Assembly: GCA_977020255.1 (NCBI GenBank)
Contig: CDROCS010000506.1
Location: forward strand, 1,984,001-2,048,000
DNA length: 64,000 nucleotides
Source of the DNA: Obrimoposthia wandeli
Lineage: Eukaryota
Reading direction: 5' to 3'
Below, in pieces: positions 46,938-56,628 of the stretch; position 1 is the first letter of the stretch; every line of letters starts with the position of its first letter. Position numbers and translations under genes: made by a program. Below the pieces are notes generated by a model that saw only the letters and a list, made by a program, of their open reading frames with translations, had not been told where the DNA came from and ran no database searches.

Positions 46938-48263
46938 TTAAGCACTTGCAGCGATTGCAGTTGGCTCGGTTTGAGAAAGACCTTTCTTCTTGCCGTAGAA
47001 AACAAGGATGATTAGCGAGACAAGGAAGGTTCCTGTTAATGCAGAGCTTTCTGCTCCGGCAAGGGCGATTAAACAAAATACACAAGCAATACCCGAGAAC
47101 AACATCACGAAGATATTTCGAGTGGTCATACTCTCTAAACGGATTAAGTTAACGCTTGAATAGAAGTAAGGCAGCATAGTAAGCAGTACAGCAATTGTGG
47201 TTAGCTGATTGAATAAGTCGCCAGTATTTGATGAACCACTAAACATCGTGATGAAAGCCATCAAAAGCGTCATCTTGATTGACGCCAGAACCAAACCTTT
47301 CTTAGCCACACCTGATTTGTCAGTTTCACCATAAATAGCAGGGAAGTTACCATCGGCAGCAGCACGTTTACCGGCTTCACCAACCAGCATCATCCATGAA
47401 CCTAACGATGTAAAACAAGCAAGAGCAGTAAATGCCGCAACAAATGGCGCTGACCAACTACCAAAAATAGACGTTGTTGCAAGTGCAAAAGGCGCACTTG
47501 ATGCAGCTACTTCAGCGGCAGGGAACATACCAGAAATCACTTGAGTAGATAAGATGTAGATAATACCCGCTAACGCAGTGCCTAGCATGGTTGCTAACGG
47601 TACTGTGCGTTTAGGGTTTTTAACCATACCCGAAGAAACAGCGGCAGATTCAACACCAACGAATGACCATAAACAGATAAGCACAGCGCTAATGATTGCA
47701 CTTGAATCACTACCAGATGAAACATTCCAGTTTTGACTGTAAATAGTGGAATCAAAATGTTCCCAGCCGACTGTTGCCGTACCGATAACAGGAATGAGAA
47801 TAAGTACAAGACCTAATGTACATAGACGGCTAACCCAAGTACCACCCAGCAAGTTAATAAAAGTGAATATCCATACCGATGCAACTGTCGCGATAGCTGC
47901 TGGAATAGGGTGGGCTAAAACAGGAAAGAATACAGAAAGATAAGAAACACCTGTAATAGCAATGGCTAAGTTACCAATCCAGTTAGCATGGTAATACAAC
48001 ACACCCGTTTGGAAACCAAGTACAGGTGCAACATCACCCGCGTAACCAATTGGGCCACCTTCTTGTGGATCCTTCGTCGATAGACGTGCAAACACAAATG
48101 CTAAACTCAACGCACCAACTAAACAAAGTATCCAGCTAAATATAGATACCGAACCGACCGCCGCTAAAGAAGACGGTAACAATGCAATACCACTGCCCAT
48201 CATGTTGCCGGCAACAACACCAGTACAGGCAATTAAGCCAATTTTTTTTGTATTAGATGACAT
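46938..48263 (-). CDS. cadB: Lysine/cadaverine antiporter (APC family)
   Basis: KKIGLIACTGVVAGNMMGSGIALLP, YYHANWIGN, WSFVGVESA. Confidence 0.96.
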   Translation of the reverse strand: MSSNTKKIGLIACTGVVAGNMMGSGIALLPSSLAAVGSVSIFSWILCLVGALSLAFVFARLSTKDPQEGGPIGYAGDVAPVLGFQTGVLYYHANWIGNLAIAITGVSYLSVFFPVLAHPIPAAIATVASVWIFTFINLLGGTWVSRLCTLGLVLILIPVIGTATVGWEHFDSTIYSQNWNVSSGSDSSAIISAVLICLWSFVGVESAAVSSGMVKNPKRTVPLATMLGTALAGIIYILSTQVISGMFPAAEVAASSAPFALATTSIFGSWSAPFVAAFTALACFTSLGSWMMLVGEAGKRAAADGNFPAIYGETDKSGVAKKGLVLASIKMTLLMAFITMFSGSSNTGDLFNQLTTIAVLLTMLPYFYSSVNLIRLESMTTRNIFVMLFSGIACVFCLIALAGAESSALTGTFLVSLIILVFYGKKKGLSQTEPTAIAASA

Positions 48264-48704
48264 CTCATCTCCCAAATTTTATCAAGTAGAGCAATATGCT
48301 CAATAAGCAAACCAGTGATTAAGTGGTGATATTGCCGAGATAAAAAATGAGTCTCAGCAGGCCACCTGAATTTCTAATTGCAGGTTACGCCGAATGAGAG
48401 AGAAAAAAATAAAGGTAAAATGAACAATAAAATCATTAGGAAATTAAACAAAGTTTATATATTCTTTATAATCAAACCCTACTTTAACATTTAAAAACAA
48501 CCACTTAAAAAACAAGAAAATAAGGTAAGTTTATATTTATTAAGAAAGTATATTTATAAAGATTGAATACAACGCTTATTAACCTAACACCTATCTACAG
48601 CTGACCTCAGAGAAGCTAAAATTTAGATGATTACTATCCATATGAAGAATTAAAAAATAGAAAAGGACTATTCACAATCAGGAAACTTAATTGGAGTGGT
48701 AGCC

Positions 48705-48918: not shown

Positions 48919-50514
48919 TTATACCAACTTGATAGCCCTAGAATTCATTGCTCGGTACATAAAAATGGCTATTCTCTCAAGATTACTATGAAATGCCAGA
49001 TTAGAACTTAGTTGGTAAGTTTCGACCGACGTATCAATGTAAAACGCCTGGGTATAAGCATCACCAGCACTATCAAGGTTGCCACTTAATTCTGCTAATT
49101 TACCAACGATAATATAATATATCGAAGAACGACGACTTTTTCCCGCCAAGCTAATCAAGTTATTTGCTTTAAGCTCATGACCTTGTAATAAGGCTTGTAA
49201 TGCCAGCGCTTCATATTCTCTTGCGGCCAATACCTTATTACCTTCATAACTATTATTCTTTAATAAATCGGCACTCGAGCGTTTAATTTCATTTACAAAC
49301 TCATCAGATAACGATAATGATGACAAGACATTATAAGCAATGTAGCGCTCAGCAAGTACTAGTCCATTAGTTGGGTCCACAGACAAGATATCTTCAAATA
49401 AATCAATTCCCTGCATAAACAATTTAGGGTCTACTTGATTAGTATAATGATTAGCCATGATTAATTTAGTTAATAAATCTTGATCTTCAGGTAAGTCTTG
49501 CATGACATAATCAAGTTGTGTCGGCGTTGGGTTAATTCTTAATGCAGCCATAAGATCAGATGATGCTTGCTCTAAACTGTCATACATCTCATCGCCTGAT
49601 ATTAAGTACTGCTTACTGAATATAATTCGATTAGATGCATTATTACGATAATTAATATCTAAATATGACAAGCCCTGTTGCTTATCTATTCTGACATTCA
49701 CTAATTTCCCCGGTAAAATACCCGTTGTAAAATCAGTTTTCTTTAACTGCACACGATAATTACTGATCGTTAATACATCATTCATTAATTTTTGGCTAAT
49801 ACCATCCGCAAGATATTCACTCGTCTTATCGGATTTCTGACTTGCACAATAGCTAAACTCAATAACTTGAGTATCTAACGATCGCGTTATTTCTGGCTTA
49901 GTTTGTACGTAGGTACAAAGGACAATAATACAAATTAATACTGACAATAGAAAACTGTCAAATAGCTGTAATTTATAGCGCTGTAAGAAAGTAAGCTTCG
50001 TCTTTGACTTTGCTTCTTCTGCTGCTGCATGTTTAGATATATGGGTGACGGCGCGAGTTAATGGCCCTGCGGGAAATACAGTAATGGCTTGTTCGTAATC
50101 TAGATCAGTATCGATATCAGTCGTTTTTTCATCATCAACAATTTCGTCTGCATTTTTACTTTCAGTAATTAATTTACGGGCATCATCACAGGTTAGTTCT
50201 ATTGTATCTGCAACTAATCGATATCCACGTTTAGGCACTGTAGCAATAAATCTTTCGCAATCAACACGTCCATCTTTTAATATTTTCCGTAGCTCAAAAA
50301 TAGACTGTGTTACCACTTGGTCACTAACAATAGCACCATCCCAAATGTGCTCAATCAACTCTTCTCGTCCAAAGACTTCACTCGGTGATTGTGCTAAAAA
50401 GGATAATAAATTAACCAAACGGGGTTCAACTGTTACTTCTCTTCCTTGTCGGTACAGCTTATTTTCTTCAACAATCAATATCCAATTACTGATTTGAAAA
50501 CATAAACCATTCAT
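48919..50514 (-). CDS. cadC: ToxR-like membrane-bound activator of cadBA
   Basis: N-terminal wHTH (EPRLVNLL, VVTQSIFELRKIL, TVPKRGY), single TM, periplasmic domain ending FYIDTSVETY; upstream of cadBA. Confidence 0.92.
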   Translation of the reverse strand: MNGLCFQISNWILIVEENKLYRQGREVTVEPRLVNLLSFLAQSPSEVFGREELIEHIWDGAIVSDQVVTQSIFELRKILKDGRVDCERFIATVPKRGYRLVADTIELTCDDARKLITESKNADEIVDDEKTTDIDTDLDYEQAITVFPAGPLTRAVTHISKHAAAEEAKSKTKLTFLQRYKLQLFDSFLLSVLICIIVLCTYVQTKPEITRSLDTQVIEFSYCASQKSDKTSEYLADGISQKLMNDVLTISNYRVQLKKTDFTTGILPGKLVNVRIDKQQGLSYLDINYRNNASNRIIFSKQYLISGDEMYDSLEQASSDLMAALRINPTPTQLDYVMQDLPEDQDLLTKLIMANHYTNQVDPKLFMQGIDLFEDILSVDPTNGLVLAERYIAYNVLSSLSLSDEFVNEIKRSSADLLKNNSYEGNKVLAAREYEALALQALLQGHELKANNLISLAGKSRRSSIYYIIVGKLAELSGNLDSAGDAYTQAFYIDTSVETYQLSSNLAFHSNLERIAIFMYRAMNSRAIKLV

Positions 50515-50888
50515 AAAAAATCCCAACATTTAATATTATTAACGCAAGGTATCACAATTCTATTTTTCAACCAACACCATAAAAGTGAGTGCTAACAAGC
50601 GATAAGCACGACGTCTAAAGCATGATTTATTCTCATAATACCAGCAGTAAAACGGCGACTAGCACTCCTTTTTCATCAGCTTAACGCATTCTCCAATAGT
50701 GTGACGTAGATCGCTAAAAACACCATATTAGGGCATTGTACCTAATATTAAATATTCTGATTAATCACCACTTTTAGAACTTAGATCAATAATAATATTA
50801 AAACAATAACCACAAAAAATAGAGGGTATAACTTCTAAAGCTACCCGCTTAATTGTGACAGTCTTTTTAACATTTGAATTTCAGATAT

Positions 50889-50920
50889 AAAAAAAGCCTG
50901 AATCGTAAGATTCAGGCTTT
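50889..50920 (-). terminator. Terminator after the degenerate tRNA-Asp copy
   Basis: GCCTGAATC/GATTCAGGC stem with U7; near-copy of the terminator at 51075-51103. Confidence 0.8.
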
Positions 50921-50930
50921 CGTTGTTTGT

Positions 50931-51036
50931 TGGCAAAGAGAGAGTGGACGACTTTTTATAAGTCACAACTCGCGGCCCCGGTGTGACAGGCCGCTTGTCT
51001 TTTTATAGAGAGTCTAACCAACTGAACTACTACTCC
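50931..51036 (-). pseudogene. tRNA-Asp-derived 106-nt element with three insertions
   Basis: Aligns in blocks to the tRNA-Asp at 51114-51190 (GGAGT.GTAGTTCAGTTGGTTAGA; GGCCTGTCAC; GCGAGTT; TCGTCCACTC; GCCA). Same CAGATTGT(A/G)C leader. Confidence 0.85.
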
Positions 51037-51074
51037 GTACAATCTGTTTTTCTGTATGCCTGAATTTCAGGCAT

Positions 51075-51103
51075 AAAAAAACCTGAATCAATGATTCAGG
51101 TTT
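51075..51103 (-). terminator. Terminator after tRNA-Asp (end of the rrn operon)
   Basis: AAACCTGAATC/GATTCAGGTTT stem with a U-tract; a second 9-bp hairpin at 51055-51075. Confidence 0.8.
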
Positions 51104-51113
51104 CTTTATTAGT

Positions 51114-51190
51114 TGGCGGAGTGGACGAGACTCGAACTCGCGACCCCCGGCGTGACAGGCCGGTATTCTAACCAACTGAACTACCACTCC
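51114..51190 (-). tRNA. tRNA-Asp(GTC)
   Basis: 77-nt cloverleaf GGAGTGG...CCGGC-CTGTCAC-GCCGG...TTCGAG...CCACTCCGCCA. Confidence 0.97.
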
Positions 51191-51273
51191 GCACAATCTG
51201 TGCTGATATAATATCAGTCTATTCTTTATACAAGGTTTACACCTTGATTGTAGTCTTTCGACTCAATTTGGCG

Positions 51274-51390
51274 CTTGGCGATGCCCTACTCTCACATGGG
51301 GAAGCCCCACACTACCATCGGCGTTATTACGTTTCACTACTGAGTTCGGAATGGAATCAGGTGGTACCGCAACACTATGGTCACCAAGCA
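51274..51390 (-). rRNA. rrf: 5S rRNA
   Basis: CCATTCCGAACTCAG.AGTGAAAC and GATGGTAGTGTGGG..TTCCCCATGTGAGAGTAGG; ends approximate. Confidence 0.97.
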
Positions 51391-51523: not shown

Positions 51524-51660
51524 ATGGTTAAGCCTCACGGGTAATTAGTACAAGTTAGCTCAATGCCTCACAGCACTTACACACCTTGCCTATCAACGTT
51601 GTAGTCTCCAACGGCCCTTTAGGGAGCTTAAAGCTCCAGTGAGAACTCATCTCGAGGCCT

Positions 51661-51691
<31 letters not shown>

Positions 51692-51860
51692 AGTTCCGAA
51701 CTTAGCTACCGGGCAATGCTATTGGCATAACAACCCGAACACCAGTGGTTCGTCCACTCCGGTCCTCTCGTACTAGGAGCAGCTCCTCTCAATTCTCAAA
51801 CGCCCACGGCAGATAGGGACCGAACTGTCTCACGACGTTCTAAACCCAGCTCGCGTACCA

Positions 51861-51893
<33 letters not shown>

Positions 51894-51895
51894 AA

Positions 51896-51938
<43 letters not shown>

Positions 51939-51967
51939 ACCGCCGTCGATATGAACTCTTGGGCGGT

Positions 51968-52023
<56 letters not shown>

Positions 52024-52144
52024 AGAACCACCGGATCACTAAGACCTACTTTCGTACCTGCTCGACGTGTCTGTCTCGCAGTTAAGCTGGCTTATGCCTT
52101 TGCACTAACCACATGATGTCCAACCATGTTTAGCCAACCTTCGT

Positions 52145-52187
<43 letters not shown>

Positions 52188-52445
52188 ACCCACCAGACAC
52201 TGTCCGCAATCCCGATAAGGGACCTACGTTAGAACATCAAACGTACAAGGGTGGTATTTCAAGGTAGACTCCACATCATCTAGCGACAATGTTTCACAGT
52301 CTCCCACCTATCCTACACATGTAGGTTCAATGTTCAGTGCCAAGCTATAGTAAAGGTTCACGGGGTCTTTCCGTCTAGCCGCGGGTACACTGCATCTTAA
52401 CAGCGATTTCAATTTCACTGAGTCTCGGGTGGAGACAGCGTGGCC

Positions 52446-52543
<98 letters not shown>

Positions 52544-54425
52544 CATGAGCTTCGACCTAAGTCTAACCCAATCAATTAACCTTCCGGCACCGGGCAGGCG
52601 TCACACCGTATACGTCATCTTTCGATTTTGCACAGTGCTGTGTTTTTAATAAACAGTTGCAGCCACCATTTCTCTGCGACCAACAATAGCTTACGGAGCA
52701 AGTCCTTCACCATCATTGGCGTACCTTCTCCCGAAGTTACGGTACCATTTTGCCTAGTTCCTTCACCCGAGTTCTCTCAAGCGCCTTAGTATTCTCTACC
52801 TAACCACCTGTGTCGGTTTGGGGTACGATTCTCTCATATCTGAAGCTTAGAGGTTTTTCCTGGAAGCCGGGTATCAACTACTTCATCTCCGTAGAGACTC
52901 GTCATCAGTTCTCAGCATTCTCATTAAAGAGAGCGACCCGGATTTGCCTAAGTCACTTGCCTACTACCTTAAACATGGACAACCATCGCCATGCTAGCCT
53001 AACCTTCTCCGTCACCCCATCGCAATATAAGCGAGTACTGGAATATTAACCAGTTTCCCATCGACTACGCCTTTCGGCCTCGCCTTAGAGTCGACTCACC
53101 CTGCCCCGATTAACGTTGGACAGGAACCCTTGGTCTTTCGGCGTGGAGGTTTTTCACCCCCATTATCGTTACTCATGTCAACATTCGCACTTCTGATACC
53201 TCCAGCAAGCTTCTCAACTCACCTTCAACGGCTTACAGAACGCTCCTCTACCATGCAAAGAACAAGTCTTTGCATCCGTAGCTTCGGTGGTATGTTTAGC
53301 CCCGTTAAATCTTCCGCGCAGACCGACTCGACCAGTGAGCTATTACGCTTTCTTTAAAAGATGGCTGCTTCTAAGCCAACTTCCTGGCTGTCTGAGCCTT
53401 TCCACATCGTTTCCCACTTAACATACACTTTGGGACCTTAGCTGACGGTCTGGGTTGTTTCCCTTTCCACGACGGACGTTAGCACCCGCCGTGTGTCTCC
53501 CGCGATTGAACTTATTGGTATTCGGAGTTTGCAAAGGGTTGGTAAGTCGGGATGACCCCCTAGCCTTAACAGTGCTCTACCCCCAATAGTTAGACGCGAG
53601 GCGCTACCTAAATAGCTTTCGAGGAGAACCAGCTATCTCCCGGTTTGATTGGCCTTTCACCCCCAGCCACAAGTCATCCGCTAATTTTTCAACATTAGTC
53701 GGTTCGGTCCTCCAGTTGATGTTACTCAACCTTCAACCTGCCCATGGCTAGATCACCGGGTTTCGGGTCTAATCCCAGCAACTATTCGCGCAGTTAACAC
53801 TCGGTTTCCCTACGGCTCCGCTATTCGCTTAACCTTGCTACTGAAATTAAGTCGTTGACCCATTATACAAAAGGTACGCAGTCACAGAACAAGTCTGCTC
53901 CCACTGCTTGTACGTATACGGTTTCAGGTTCTATTTCACTCCCCTCACAGGGGTTCTTTTCGCCTTTCCCTCACGGTACTGGTTCACTATCGGTCAGTCA
54001 GTAGTATTTAGCCTTGGAAGATGGTCCTCCCATATTCAAACAGCATATCACGTGTGCCGTCCTACTCGATTTCACAGTAAGGTCGTTTTCATGTACGGGA
54101 CTATCACCCTGTATCGTGAAACTTTCCAGATTCTTCCATTAACTTCCAAACTGCTTAAGGGCTAGACCCCGTTCGCTCGCCGCTACTAAGGGTATCTCTA
54201 TTGATTTCTTTTCCTCGGGGTACTTAGATGTTTCAGTTCTCCCGGTTCGCTTCGTTAAGCTATGTATTCACTTAACGATACCTTACTTAGTAAGGTGGGT
54301 TCCCCCATTCGGAAATCTGTGGATTAACGCTTTTTATCAACTCCCCACAGCTTAACGCAGATTAACACGTCCTTCATCGCCTCTGACTGCCTAGGCATCC
54401 ACCGTATACGCTTAGTCACTTAACC
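51524..54425 (-). rRNA. rrl: 23S rRNA (~2.9 kb, no large insertion)
   Basis: 5' GGTTAAGTGACTAAGCG, sarcin-ricin loop AGTACGAGAGGAC, 3' CCGTGAGGCTTAACC; ends approximate. Confidence 0.98.
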
Positions 54426-54899: not shown

Positions 54900-55020
54900 T
54901 AAGGAGGTGATCCAGCCCCAGGTTCCCCTAGGGCTACCTTGTTACGACTTCACCCCAGTCATGAACCACACCGTGGTCATCGCCCTCCCGAAGGTTAAGC
55001 TAATGACTTCTGGTGCAGCC

Positions 55021-55074
<54 letters not shown>

Positions 55075-55232
55075 GACATTCTGATTCACGATTACTAGCG
55101 ATTCCGACTTCATGGGGTCGAGTTGCAGACCCCAATCCGGACTACGACGCACTTTATGGGATTCGCTTACCATCGCTGGTTTGCAGCCCTTTGTATGCGC
55201 CATTGTAGCACGTGTGTAGCCCTACTCGTAAG

Positions 55233-55285
<53 letters not shown>

Positions 55286-55325
55286 CTCCTTAGAGTTCCC
55301 ACCATTACGTGCTGGCAAATAAGGA

Positions 55326-55361
<36 letters not shown>

Positions 55362-55367
55362 TTCACA

Positions 55368-55399
<32 letters not shown>

Positions 55400-55455
55400 C
55401 TCATAGTTCCCGAAGGCACCAATTCATCTCTGAAAAGTTCTATGGATGTCAAGAG

Positions 55456-55526
<71 letters not shown>

Positions 55527-55632
55527 ATTTGAGTTTTAACCTTGCGGCCGTACTCCCCAGGCGGTCTACTTAATGCGTTAGCTTAAGAGCCCAGTTCTCA
55601 AGGAACCAAACTCCGAGTAGACATCGTTTACG

Positions 55633-55666
<34 letters not shown>

Positions 55667-55887
55667 ACCCACGCTTTCGCATCTGAGCGTCAGTTACTTG
55701 CCAGGTGGCCGCCTTCGCCACTGGTATTCCTTCAGATCTCTACGCATTTCACCGCTACACCTGAAATTCTACCACCCTCTCAAGAACTCTAGTTTGCCAG
55801 TTCGAAATGCAGTTCTGGTTGAGCCCGGGGCTTTCACATCTCGCTTAACAAACCGCCTGCATGCGCTTTACGCCCAGTAATTCCGAT

Positions 55888-55943
<56 letters not shown>

Positions 55944-56071
55944 CTTCTGCGAGTAACGTCACAGTGATAAAGTATTAATTTACCACCTTTCCTCCTCGCT
56001 GAAAGTACTTTACAACCCGAAGGCCTTCTTCATACACGCGGTATGGCTGCATCAGGCTTTCGCCCATTGTG

Positions 56072-56154
<83 letters not shown>

Positions 56155-56441
56155 GGGATCGTCGCCTTGGTGAGCTCTTACCTCACCAACAAGCTAATCC
56201 CACTTGGGCTCATCTAGTCGCGAGAGCTTTCAAGAAGAGGCCCCCTTTCACCCGTAGGTCGTATGCGGTATTAGCAGTCGTTTCCAACTGTTGTCCCCCT
56301 CGACTAGGCAGATTCCCAAGCATTACTCACCCGTCCGCCGCTCGACGCCAGAATAGCAAGCTATTCTTCGTTTCCGCTCGACTTGCATGTGTTAAGCCTA
56401 CCGCCAGCGTTCAATCTGAGCCATGATCAAACTCTTCAATT
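54900..56441 (-). rRNA. rrs: 16S rRNA
   Basis: AGAGTTTGATCATGGCTCAG, GTGCCAGCAGCCGCGGTAA, anti-SD GATCACCTCCTTA; ends approximate. Confidence 0.99.
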
Positions 56442-56628
56442 AAAAGTTTTTTTGACTGACTGCCTAAGCAGCCAAGTCGGCTCAATGAATTCTGTACTTC
56501 AACAACAAACCGAAGCTTGTTGTTTATAAAACCAAATCTTTCGATTTAATTTAATGTTCACAATTACATTGATATAATATTTGGTCATTATATCTCTGCA
56601 AGTGCTCACACAGATTGCTTGAATAAAT

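What the first reader, a model, noticed from the sequence alone, without database searches (positions are those of the whole stretch)
50931..51036. tRNA-Asp-derived RNA that looks remodelled rather than randomly decayed
Seen (minus strand): GGAGTAGTAGTTCAGTTGGTTAGA-CTCTCTATAAAAAGACAA-GCGGCC-TGTCACACCGG-GGCCGC-GAG-TTGT-GACTTATAAAAAGTC-GTCCACTCTCTCTTT-GCCA. Two insertions share TATAAAAAG and flank the anticodon region. Substitutions create a new perfect GCGGCC/GGCCGC stem, extendable by ACAA/TTGT, that still loops out GUC. The T-loop is replaced by a GACTT/AAGTC hairpin. The 5' end, D-arm sequence and terminal GCCA are retained, with a U/C-rich insert before it. Inference: point decay would not be expected to insert the same 9-mer twice and build complementary arms, so this may be a tRNA-derived ncRNA (sponge, decoy or processing-dependent regulator) or the footprint of a small element that targets tRNA genes.
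Basis: partly seen in the sequence, partly recalled or inferred. Interest (0 to 1): 0.72.

Follow-up and report, generated by a model that had tools for sequence, protein, structure and literature searches.

The report
Conserved remodelled tRNA-Asp copy behind tRNA-Asp
The odd 106-base tRNA-Asp look-alike is real, and it belongs to an apparently undescribed, conserved family of refolded tRNA-Asp copies that sit in tandem behind genuine tRNA-Asp genes in Moritella, Aliivibrio, Shewanella and Thalassotalea, so it is a candidate new structured RNA rather than a randomly decayed pseudogene.

Summary

**Context.** The window is a Moritella-like bacterial contig inside a large mixed assembly. The order on the minus strand is 16S, tRNA-Ile, tRNA-Ala, 23S, 5S, tRNA-Asp, terminator, this unit, terminator.

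**Origin.** The unit is a tandem copy of the whole leader/tRNA-Asp/terminator cassette. No tRNA finder or Rfam family recognises it.

**It is not a one-off.**
- The same remodelled unit follows 4 of 7 tRNA-Asp genes on this chromosome.
- It occurs in 11 of 13 Moritellaceae species and 13 of 15 Aliivibrio species, with related forms in Shewanella and Thalassotalea.
- It always lies behind a real tRNA-Asp.
- Unit subtypes are older than the species that carry them.

**Structure.**
- In Aliivibrio the two insertions are the most conserved segments (0.92 and 0.89 identity, against 0.42-0.62 for flanks). They pair with each other over 12 + 6 bp, 95% paired, and every common polymorphism keeps the pair through wobble.
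- In the window copy the same rod fold is the predicted minimum at 10 C.

**Expression.** Evidence is weak: one metatranscriptome contig, with no ends.

**Function.** My best guess is a read-through trailer module that adds processing and fail-safe termination. This is inferred, not shown. A trans-acting tRNA mimic and functionless repeat DNA remain live rivals.

Another first-stage note (s1-237463) flagged a sister array in the same genome.

The parts
51114..51190 (-). genuine tRNA-Asp (GUC), last gene of the rrn operon; parent of the cassette
   Evidence: ARAGORN; Rfam tRNA 68.7 bits
51072..51103 (-). intrinsic terminator of tRNA-Asp (11-bp stem 51079-51103, then T run)
   Evidence: sequence; the scan lists this stem only on the + strand; the reading as a minus-strand terminator is by eye, where the same stem is followed by a run of 7 T
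51056..51074 (.). 19-bp palindrome with core CCTGAAATTCAGG, repeated in every spacer of Moritella arrays
51037..51046 (-). copied 5' leader (9 of 10 identical to the leader of the real tRNA-Asp at 51191-51200)
50931..51036 (-). the remodelled tRNA-Asp-derived unit (106 nt)
51013..51036 (-). unit 1-24: 5' acceptor strand, D-stem 5' side and D loop, almost identical to the real tRNA
50994..51012 (-). insertion 1 (unit 25-43) replacing the D-stem 3' side and position 26. With the two preceding bases (unit 23-34, 51003-51014) it forms the 5' strand of the proposed long helix.
50979..50993 (-). anticodon arm remnant (loop still reads GUC; G39A weakens the canonical stem in this copy)
50950..50966 (-). 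insertion 2 (unit 71-87) replacing the T loop; its 3' part (50950-50961) is the 3' strand of the proposed long helix (10 of 12 pairs)
50935..50941 (-). CU-rich insertion between the 3' acceptor strand and GCCA, present in most Moritella units and absent in Aliivibrio
50931..50934 (-). retained GCCA end
50885..50921 (-). the unit's own intrinsic terminator (13-bp stem 50892-50921, then T run)

Best explanation
**What it is.** The 106-nt stretch is one member of a conserved, so far unannotated family of tRNA-Asp-derived cassettes.

**Origin (shown).** The whole cassette of leader, tRNA-Asp and terminator was duplicated in tandem behind the real gene.

**Remodelling (shown).**
- In the copy, two related A/U-rich insertions replace the 3' side of the D stem (position 26) and the T loop.
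- The tRNA L-shape is thereby abolished.
- The 5' acceptor strand, the D loop, the anticodon stem and, in Moritella, acceptor pairing and GCCA are kept.

**Fold (supported by comparison).** The two insertions pair with each other. The molecule therefore refolds from a cloverleaf into a long interrupted hairpin that encloses the anticodon arm.

**How it probably works (inferred).**
- No promoter-like site precedes it, so it is made only when RNA polymerase reads through the tRNA-Asp terminator of the very strongly transcribed rrn/tRNA-Asp operon.
- The retained acceptor stem plus GCCA stacked on a rod resembles hairpin-type RNase P substrates. This would let the trailer be cut off at the unit's 5' end.
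- The unit's own terminator stops the transcript.
- Each cassette would thus be a fail-safe processing and termination module that shields downstream genes, here a CadC-like regulator gene on the same strand.
- It is not a decoding tRNA.

**Confidence by layer.**
| Claim | Confidence |
|---|---|
| Family member derived by cassette duplication, not a tRNA | about 0.9 |
| RNA-level structure under selection | about 0.6 |
| The cis-acting trailer function | about 0.3-0.35 |
For: **Cassette duplication.**
- The alignment of the two units includes leader and terminator.
- ARAGORN and Rfam find the real tRNA only.
- No Rfam hit covers the unit as tRNA even at E <= 10.

**Family.**
- 6 to 8 copies in the same assembly, each behind a tRNA-Asp.
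- Exact-pattern hits in four Moritella species, two Shewanella, Thalassotalea and A. fischeri ES114.
- 11 of 13 Moritellaceae species; 13 of 15 Aliivibrio species.
- 12 true hits among 401 genomes of the order, with 0 hits for the reversed control.
- In Moritella the insertion motif is confined to the arrays.

**Age.** In the unit tree, units of this genome fall into at least 3 clades shared with other species (96/92, 99/87 support).

**Constraint in Aliivibrio.** Between-genome identity is 0.92 for insertion 1 and 0.89 for insertion 2. This compares with 0.47 for the leader, 0.62 for the terminator and 0.42 for the spacer.

**Helix between the insertions.**
- 12/12 pairs with 4 G-U in Aliivibrio, 12/12 in a sister type of this genome, 10/12 here.
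- On 37 Aliivibrio units the two helices are 95.3% and 95.4% paired, and the common polymorphisms are wobble-compatible (G/A opposite U, U/C opposite G).
- Two of these sites are mismatched in 15-17 units under the local-hairpin alternative.
- The rod is the MFE of the window copy at 10 C and lies 0.6 kcal/mol above the MFE at 37 C.
- It is the centroid structure for two other Moritella units.

**Structured extra module.** A D-loop module shared by Moritella and Shewanella has compensatory changes in 4 of 13 pairs.

**Transcription.**
- No sigma-70-like site lies on the minus strand, and terminators flank the unit.
- An RNA-library contig lies over the unit, while the non-genic spacer 50572-50906 has no cover in three RNA runs.
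Against: - **Expression is not shown.** There is one contig at depth about 8 in 1 of 3 metatranscriptomes. Contigs give no ends, strand or level, and DNA carry-over cannot be excluded.
- **Moritella shows no extra constraint on the insertions.** They are no better conserved than the leader and terminator: 0.71-0.74 against 0.74-0.75.
- **The Moritella long helix is weak statistically.** It is only 81% paired, not above shuffles, with recurrent C.A mismatches.
- **The single-copy fold is not more stable than shuffles**.
- **The Aliivibrio polymorphisms may be few events.** They may represent only two or three independent events inherited by two paralogue lineages.
- **Mosaic units point to frequent gene conversion.** Units with insertion 1 and a normal T arm exist. 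This can mimic covariation in the tRNA-derived stems.
- **Array length is not critical.** It varies from 1 to 5 units.
- **RNase P cleavage and an insulating effect are pure inference.**
Confidence: 0.45

Rival explanations
1. Functionless repeat DNA. The cassettes are by-products of unequal crossing-over and gene conversion among the many rrn/tRNA-Asp loci. They persist because loss at one locus is re-seeded from others. The insertions are historical accidents carried along.
For: - Arrays vary from 1 to 5 units, with truncated and mosaic units.
- T-stem variants of the units follow the resident real tRNA, as expected from conversion.
- In Moritella the insertions are no better conserved than the rest of the cassette.
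- No helix exceeds the shuffle controls in Moritella.
- Thalassotalea spacers hold obvious tRNA 3' fragments.
Against: - Concerted evolution homogenises copies within a genome but does not slow divergence between species. Yet in Aliivibrio the insertions stay at 0.89-0.92 identity while flanks drop to 0.42-0.62.
- The same motifs recur in four families.
- Subtypes outlive speciation.
- Polymorphisms in the inter-insertion helix are all wobble-compatible on the tRNA-sense strand.
Confidence: 0.25
2. A trans-acting tRNA mimic. The unit is released from the read-through transcript as a stable small RNA of roughly 105-150 nt. It binds a factor that normally sees tRNA-Asp or its precursor (a nuclease, a modification enzyme, AspRS or a toxin), or it acts as an RNA or protein sponge.
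For: - Sequence-level, not only structural, conservation of the D arm and both insertions in Aliivibrio.
- G10, G73-CCA and usually the GUC loop are retained in Moritella units.
- Each unit carries a terminator hairpin with a U tail, as small RNAs do.
- There is precedent in RtT RNA and the 3' ETS of leuZ (from my own knowledge).
Against: - No promoter of its own.
- Only trace RNA evidence.
- The anticodon loop varies (GUC, GAC, AUC and others), and in Aliivibrio the acceptor stem is only 73% paired. AspRS- or anticodon-specific recognition is therefore unlikely to be the common function.
- Copy number is variable.
Confidence: 0.2
3. Footprint of a small mobile hairpin element (MITE- or REP-like) that inserts into tRNA genes or dead tRNA copies.
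For: - The two insertions resemble each other and are partly palindromic.
- In Shewanella the larger insertions carry a GCATCCNTGC hairpin that is dispersed 53-87 times per genome, against 7-15 for the control.
Against: - In Moritella the insertion-1 motif and the D-loop module hairpin occur only in the arrays.
- No plasmid or phage match.
- The insertions sit at the same two tRNA positions in all lineages and co-vary as two strands of one helix.
- No target-site duplications were seen by eye.
Confidence: 0.06
4. A working tRNA-Asp gene with intervening sequences that are removed after transcription.
For: - The 5' end, the anticodon loop and GCCA are retained.
- Some relatives with insertion 1 and a normal T arm are called as odd 92-96-nt tRNAs by ARAGORN.
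Against: - ARAGORN and Rfam do not call this unit.
- Removing the insertions does not restore the D stem or the T stem.
- The insertions are 17-19 nt, unlike bacterial group I introns.
- Anticodons vary within the family.
Confidence: 0.02
5. Assembly artefact in a repeat-rich rrn flank.
For: - Two sister loci (L002, L003) carry indels in the real tRNA and in 5S that look like consensus errors.
- Contigs break at the repeats.
Against: - An identical 180-nt contig in run X12 and a near-identical RNA-library contig in X2.
- The same architecture in finished genomes of other species.
Confidence: 0.01

Closest known systems
RtT RNA of the E. coli tyrT operon (Rfam RF00391; from my own knowledge)
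   Same: Repeated units directly downstream of a tRNA gene, containing tRNA-derived sequence, released from the tRNA operon transcript, function still unclear.
   Different: RtT repeats hold only the last bases of tyrT and no tRNA 5' half. No sequence or model similarity: nothing from Rfam matches the unit. Here the whole cassette with its terminator is copied and refolded by two insertions.
Tandem tRNA pseudogenes in tRNA arrays of Vibrionaceae (for example the Photobacterium phosphoreum tRNA-Pro/His cluster described by Giroux and Cedergren; recalled from memory, not found in the paper library)
   Same: Tandem duplication of tRNA genes with non-functional copies in marine gamma-proteobacteria.
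   Different: Those are treated as decaying copies. Here the same specific insertions are conserved across species and families and form a helix.
tRNA-precursor by-products that act as RNA sponges (3' external transcribed spacer of leuZ; from my own knowledge)
   Same: An RNA arising from the 3' trailer of a tRNA operon that could have a function of its own.
   Different: The 3' ETS lies before the terminator and is made with every transcript. This unit lies behind a terminator, is itself tRNA-derived, and no target or seed is known.
Hairpin-type RNase P substrates (4.5S RNA precursor, tmRNA precursor; from my own knowledge)
   Same: Acceptor-like stem with 3' RCCA stacked on a long helix, without a tRNA elbow.
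   Different: Resemblance of shape only; cleavage was not tested; in Moritella a CU-rich insert separates the stem from GCCA.
Fail-safe tandem terminators at the ends of rrn operons (for example rrnB T1/T2; from my own knowledge)
   Same: Several strong intrinsic terminators in series after the last gene of an rrn operon.
   Different: Here each extra terminator comes with a conserved tRNA-derived structured element, which in Aliivibrio is better conserved than the terminator itself.

Membership tests
Functional tRNA (Rfam RF00005, tRNA-Asp) | Cloverleaf recognised by tRNA finders at their thresholds | tested here: not met
   ARAGORN calls only 51114-51190. Rfam tRNA gives no match over the unit even at E <= 10.
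Functional tRNA (Rfam RF00005, tRNA-Asp) | Intact D stem and 7-nt T loop for the elbow | tested here: not met
   The D-stem 3' side and the T loop are replaced by insertions.
Tandem duplicate of the tRNA-Asp cassette | Homology extends into leader and terminator of the parent gene | tested here: met
   A1: leader 9 of 10, terminator and following palindrome aligned.
Randomly decaying pseudogene | Changes differ between copies and species; no constraint beyond that of the flanks | tested here: not met
   The same insertions recur in 11/13 Moritellaceae and 13/15 Aliivibrio species. Insertions are at 0.89-0.92 identity against 0.42-0.62 for flanks in Aliivibrio. In Moritella alone this test is inconclusive.
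RtT RNA (RF00391) | Match to the Rfam model | tested here: not met
   No hit.
MITE/REP-like mobile element | Dispersed copies outside the locus type | tested here: not met
   In three Moritella genomes the insertion-1 motif lies in the arrays, apart from 4 chance-level hits. The D-loop module hairpin is likewise confined. No plasmid or phage match. A Shewanella hairpin motif is dispersed, but it is not part of the window's unit.
Structured non-coding RNA | Base pairs kept through compensatory or wobble changes, above controls | tested here: inconclusive
   Aliivibrio: helices 95% paired, paired cells and covariation score above all 500 shuffles, and a site pattern that favours the long helix. 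The sequences are related and the events few. Moritella: not above shuffles. D-loop module: 4 of 13 pairs compensatory in 6 sequences.
Structured non-coding RNA | A transcript with defined ends | not testable with these tools
   Only Logan contigs were available: one RNA-library contig over the unit, with no ends or strand.
Intrinsic terminator cassette | G+C-rich hairpin followed by a T run on the transcribed strand | tested here: met
   50921-50892 on the minus strand: 13 pairs, then a T run. The equivalent hairpin lies behind the real tRNA.

The most novel reading that the evidence does not exclude
A previously undescribed class of bacterial RNA. A tRNA-Asp copy has been refolded from cloverleaf to rod by two complementary insertions. 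It has been kept for a long time in several families of marine, mostly cold-water gamma-proteobacteria, including the model symbiont Aliivibrio fischeri. It would act as an RNA in its own right, either as a tRNA-precursor mimic that engages RNase P or another tRNA-binding factor, or as a regulatory or decoy RNA made in proportion to rrn read-through.
Probability: 0.35. Interest if true: 0.8.

Novelty: new variant of a known kind. Interest (0 to 1): 0.62.

Why it matters
- tRNA-derived RNAs with functions of their own are few in bacteria, and most were found by chance.
- This is a multi-copy, unannotated element that sits next to the most strongly transcribed operons of the cell.
- It is conserved across genera, and it is present in a genetically tractable model (A. 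fischeri ES114, 7 annotated tRNA-Asp genes and no annotation of these units; PMC11294920). That makes it directly testable.
- It shows how a tRNA gene can be converted into a different fold by two matching insertions.
- If it proves functional, it may explain how cells deal with read-through from rrn operons.
- It is also a practical annotation issue. Relatives with a normal T arm are miscalled as 92-96-nt tRNA-Cys(ACA) or tRNA-Phe(AAA).

Tried and rejected
- **Rfam.** Searched at gathering and at E-value thresholds on the window and on six related loci. Only spurious terminator-driven hits such as MicC and Thr_leader, all far below threshold.
- **RNAalifold on Moritella and Aliivibrio units.** It gave implausible consensus folds. 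I therefore scored named alternatives instead.
- **Hammerhead-like core, CsrA GGA loops, promoter reading on either strand, small ORF.** All considered by eye and dropped, because the needed motifs are not conserved in the family.
- **Antisense terminator.** The scan found one formed by the anticodon stem plus the T run of insertion 1 on the plus strand. It is not conserved in Aliivibrio, so I dropped it as a general explanation.
- **Plasmid and phage collections.** No match.
- **Literature.** Five full-text searches found no description of these units.
  - One genome search failed because 'of' needs a genome handle.
  - Two structure strings were malformed, and one script crashed on a regex.
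- **Three tRNA-Asp loci not inspected.** The three tRNA-Asp loci on this chromosome without a detected unit were therefore not inspected, and no further genomes were fetched. I did not try to obtain those letters in another way.

Full report
**1. What is there**

The window is bacterial. On the minus strand lie:
- 16S rRNA (54900-56442);
- tRNA-Ile and tRNA-Ala;
- 23S rRNA (51524-54425);
- 5S rRNA (51273-51388);
- tRNA-Asp (51114-51190).

Aligning the 176 bases that hold the real tRNA-Asp with the 176 bases that hold the flagged stretch shows that the whole cassette was duplicated. The copied parts are the 10-nt leader (9 of 10 identical), the tRNA body, the trailer, the terminator hairpin with its T run, and the start of a palindrome that follows it.

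Within the tRNA body the copy differs from its parent mainly by three insertions:
- unit 25-43, replacing the 3' side of the D stem and position 26;
- unit 71-87, replacing the T loop;
- a CU-rich 7-mer before GCCA.

TATAAAAAG occurs in both large insertions.

ARAGORN does not call the unit, and no Rfam family, tRNA included, matches it even at E <= 10. Its predicted stability is ordinary, z = -0.85.

A contig of run X12 covers 50909-51088 without a difference, and a metatranscriptome contig covers 50909-51082 with two differences. I therefore see no sign of mis-assembly, though X12 may be the source sample.

**2. It is a family, not an accident**

*This assembly.*
- The assembly that holds the window is a 1.35-Gb mixture with many bacterial contigs.
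- On the window's own contig there are 7 real tRNA-Asp genes. Four of them are followed by units with the same insertions at the same positions. Two more such loci lie on other contigs.
- Arrays hold one to three units here. Some units are truncated.
- One third-position unit has insertion 1 but a normal T arm, and ARAGORN calls it a 92-nt tRNA-Cys(ACA).

*Public species genomes.* An exact pattern spanning the D loop and the start of insertion 1 was scanned against 185,579 species genomes. It hit Moritella sp. JT01, M. dasanensis, Moritella sp. PE36, a Moritella MAG, Shewanella atlantica, a Shewanella MAG, Thalassotalea sp. ND16A and Aliivibrio fischeri ES114, plus one unrelated hit. The bacterium in the window is thus a Moritella or a close relative.

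*Prevalence.*
- A covariance model of the Moritella type finds 1 to 10 units in 11 of 13 Moritellaceae species.
- A pattern for the Aliivibrio type finds up to 12 units in 13 of 15 Aliivibrio species.
- In an even sample of 401 genomes of the GTDB order, 16 had the pattern. Four were unrelated GC-rich matches, and the reversed control pattern hit nowhere.
- The 12 true hits were 8 Moritellaceae, 3 Shewanella-like genomes and 1 Aliivibrio.

*Position.* In every locus I read, the units lie directly behind a genuine tRNA-Asp. This holds whether that gene ends an rrn operon or belongs to a free-standing tRNA operon, as in Thalassotalea, the Shewanella MAG and A. fischeri chromosome 2.

*Not mobile, not described.*
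- Nothing similar is present in the plasmid or phage collections.
- In Moritella the insertion-1 motif occurs essentially only in these arrays.
- The published A. fischeri ES114 annotation, as summarised in PMC11294920, lists 7 tRNA-Asp genes and no such elements.
- Five literature searches found no description.

**3. Signs of constraint**

*Age of the subtypes.* A maximum-likelihood tree of 50 distinct Moritella units does not group them by genome. The units of this genome fall into at least three clades shared with other species. Examples are the sister type at L004-L006 with units of G143 and G160 (support 96/92), and the unit with a normal T arm with one of G176 (99/87). Unit subtypes are therefore older than these species.

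*Between-genome identity by segment.*

| Segment | Aliivibrio (35 units, 13 genomes) | Moritella |
|---|---|---|
| Leader | 0.47 | 0.74 |
| 5' part / D arm | 0.90 | 0.88 |
| Insertion 1 | 0.92 | 0.71 |
| Anticodon arm | 0.84 | 0.87 |
| Insertion 2 | 0.89 | 0.74 |
| 3' acceptor strand | 0.73 | not compared |
| Trailer and terminator | 0.62 | 0.75 |
| Next spacer / beyond cassette | 0.42 | 0.47 |

In Aliivibrio the insertions are the best conserved segments. That is not what a decaying copy or a hitch-hiking spacer predicts. In Moritella the picture is weaker: there the whole cassette is conserved, and the insertions do not stand out.

*Gene conversion.*
- T-stem variants of the units follow the resident real tRNA.
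- Mosaic units exist, combining insertion 1 with a normal T arm, with or without an extra variable-arm hairpin.
- This shows frequent conversion and unequal exchange. Apparent covariation in tRNA-derived stems therefore cannot be taken at face value.

**4. Structure**

*Moritella.* Several mutually exclusive helices pair about equally well in 18 distinct Moritella units, and none exceeds the shuffle controls:

| Helix | Cells paired |
|---|---|
| Cloverleaf remnants | 92% |
| Local hairpin in insertion 2 | 88% |
| Long helix between the 5' half of insertion 1 and the 3' half of insertion 2 | 81% |

*The long helix, tested unit by unit.*
- 12 of 12 pairs, four of them G-U, in Aliivibrio.
- 12 of 12 in the sister type of this genome.
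- 10 of 12 in the window copy.
- 9 of 12, not significant, in PE36 and JT01.

*Aliivibrio, 37 units.*
- The 12-bp helix and an adjoining 6-bp helix are 95.3% and 95.4% paired.
- Every common polymorphism keeps the pair through wobble: G/A opposite U, U/C opposite G.
- Under the alternative of two local hairpins, two of these sites are mismatched in 15 and 17 units.
- These may be few independent events, so I call the covariation evidence suggestive.

It lies 0.6 kcal/mol above the MFE at 37 C and is the MFE at 10 C, a realistic temperature for Moritella. The same fold is the centroid for two other Moritella units.

In Shewanella units that keep a normal T arm, both strands sit together as a local hairpin at position 26.

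*Extra module.* Some Moritella and Shewanella units carry a further 45-55-nt module in the D loop. It has two hairpins, and 4 of 13 pairs change on both sides while staying paired (6 sequences).
- In Moritella this module is confined to the arrays.
- In Shewanella a related hairpin motif is dispersed in the genome. Part of the larger Shewanella insertions may therefore be repeat-element insertions.

**5. Expression**

- No sigma-70-like site precedes the unit on its strand, and terminator hairpins flank it. Any transcript must come from read-through of the tRNA-Asp terminator.
- Of three marine metatranscriptome runs that hold this organism's CadC-like mRNA (depth 4-9), one has a contig over the unit, with summed depth about 8-14 over the unit.
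- None of the three covers the 330-bp spacer between the unit's terminator and the CadC-like gene.
- This fits low-level read-through, but contigs give no ends, strand or level.

**6. Interpretation**

*Shown.*
- Cassette duplication.
- Loss of tRNA character.
- Family membership across genera.
- Long persistence.
- In Aliivibrio, sequence constraint centred on the insertions.

*Supported but not proven.*
- An RNA-level rod fold made by pairing of the two insertions.

*Inferred.*
- The unit is a module of the read-through trailer.
- Its acceptor-like stem with GCCA on top of a rod resembles hairpin substrates of RNase P and would allow the trailer to be cut.
- Its own terminator ends the transcript.
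- Each cassette would then add a processing and termination step between a very strong operon and the next gene. Here that gene is a CadC-like regulator followed by a CadB-like permease on the same strand.

*Odds.* I put about 0.3-0.35 on this function, 0.2 on a trans-acting tRNA mimic, and 0.25 on no function. The remainder, about 0.2, goes to the minor rivals and to functions I have not thought of.

- No N stretches were met.
- Read laying was given 2001 letters.

Noticed in passing
window 48919-50529 (-) and 46938-48275 (-): The first gene behind the array, on the same strand as the rrn operon, is a 536-aa protein with an N-terminal Trans_reg_C domain (CadC/ToxR-like). It is followed by an amino-acid permease (CadB-like). 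Read-through from the rrn operon would run into this acid-stress regulator.
   Followed up: partly
window 51056-51074 and each spacer of loci L001-L006, L023, L026, L033: A 19-bp palindrome with core CCTGAAATTCAGG follows every terminator in Moritella arrays. It shares its half-site with the terminator stem. It could be a second hairpin or a protein-binding site.
   Followed up: no
L002 (G000:C506:2133942-2137046) and L003 (G000:C5043): The real tRNA-Asp, and in L003 the 5S rRNA too, carry several single-base deletions, and ARAGORN finds no tRNA there. These are either consensus errors of the assembly in repeats or truly broken rrn ends.
   Followed up: no
L006:1320-1419 (-), L022:151-246 (+): Units with insertion 1, an extra variable-arm hairpin and a normal T arm are called by ARAGORN as 92-nt tRNA-Cys(ACA) and 96-nt tRNA-Phe(AAA). 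These are likely mis-annotations in public genomes.
   Followed up: partly
Genomes G003, G220, G307 (Shewanella-like): The hairpin motif GCATCCNTGC occurs 53-87 times per genome against 7-15 for the reversed control, often in pairs. This is a dispersed small repeat family that has also entered the tRNA-Asp-like units.
   Followed up: partly
L021 (Thalassotalea sp. ND16A), spacers between the four real tRNA-Asp genes: The spacers contain fragments resembling the T arm and 3' acceptor end of tRNA-Asp, reminiscent of the repeats behind E. coli tyrT.
   Followed up: no
G000 contigs C253, C2834, C1209, C122, C4929, C5841 and others: The assembly holds many further bacterial contigs with their own tRNA-Asp arrays, for example 7 tandem copies on C253. 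The 'genome' is therefore a host plus a community of bacteria.
   Followed up: no
window 50985-50999 (+): On the strand opposite to the unit, the anticodon stem plus the T run made by insertion 1 scores as an intrinsic terminator. JT01-type units show an even better one by eye, but Aliivibrio units do not.
   Followed up: partly
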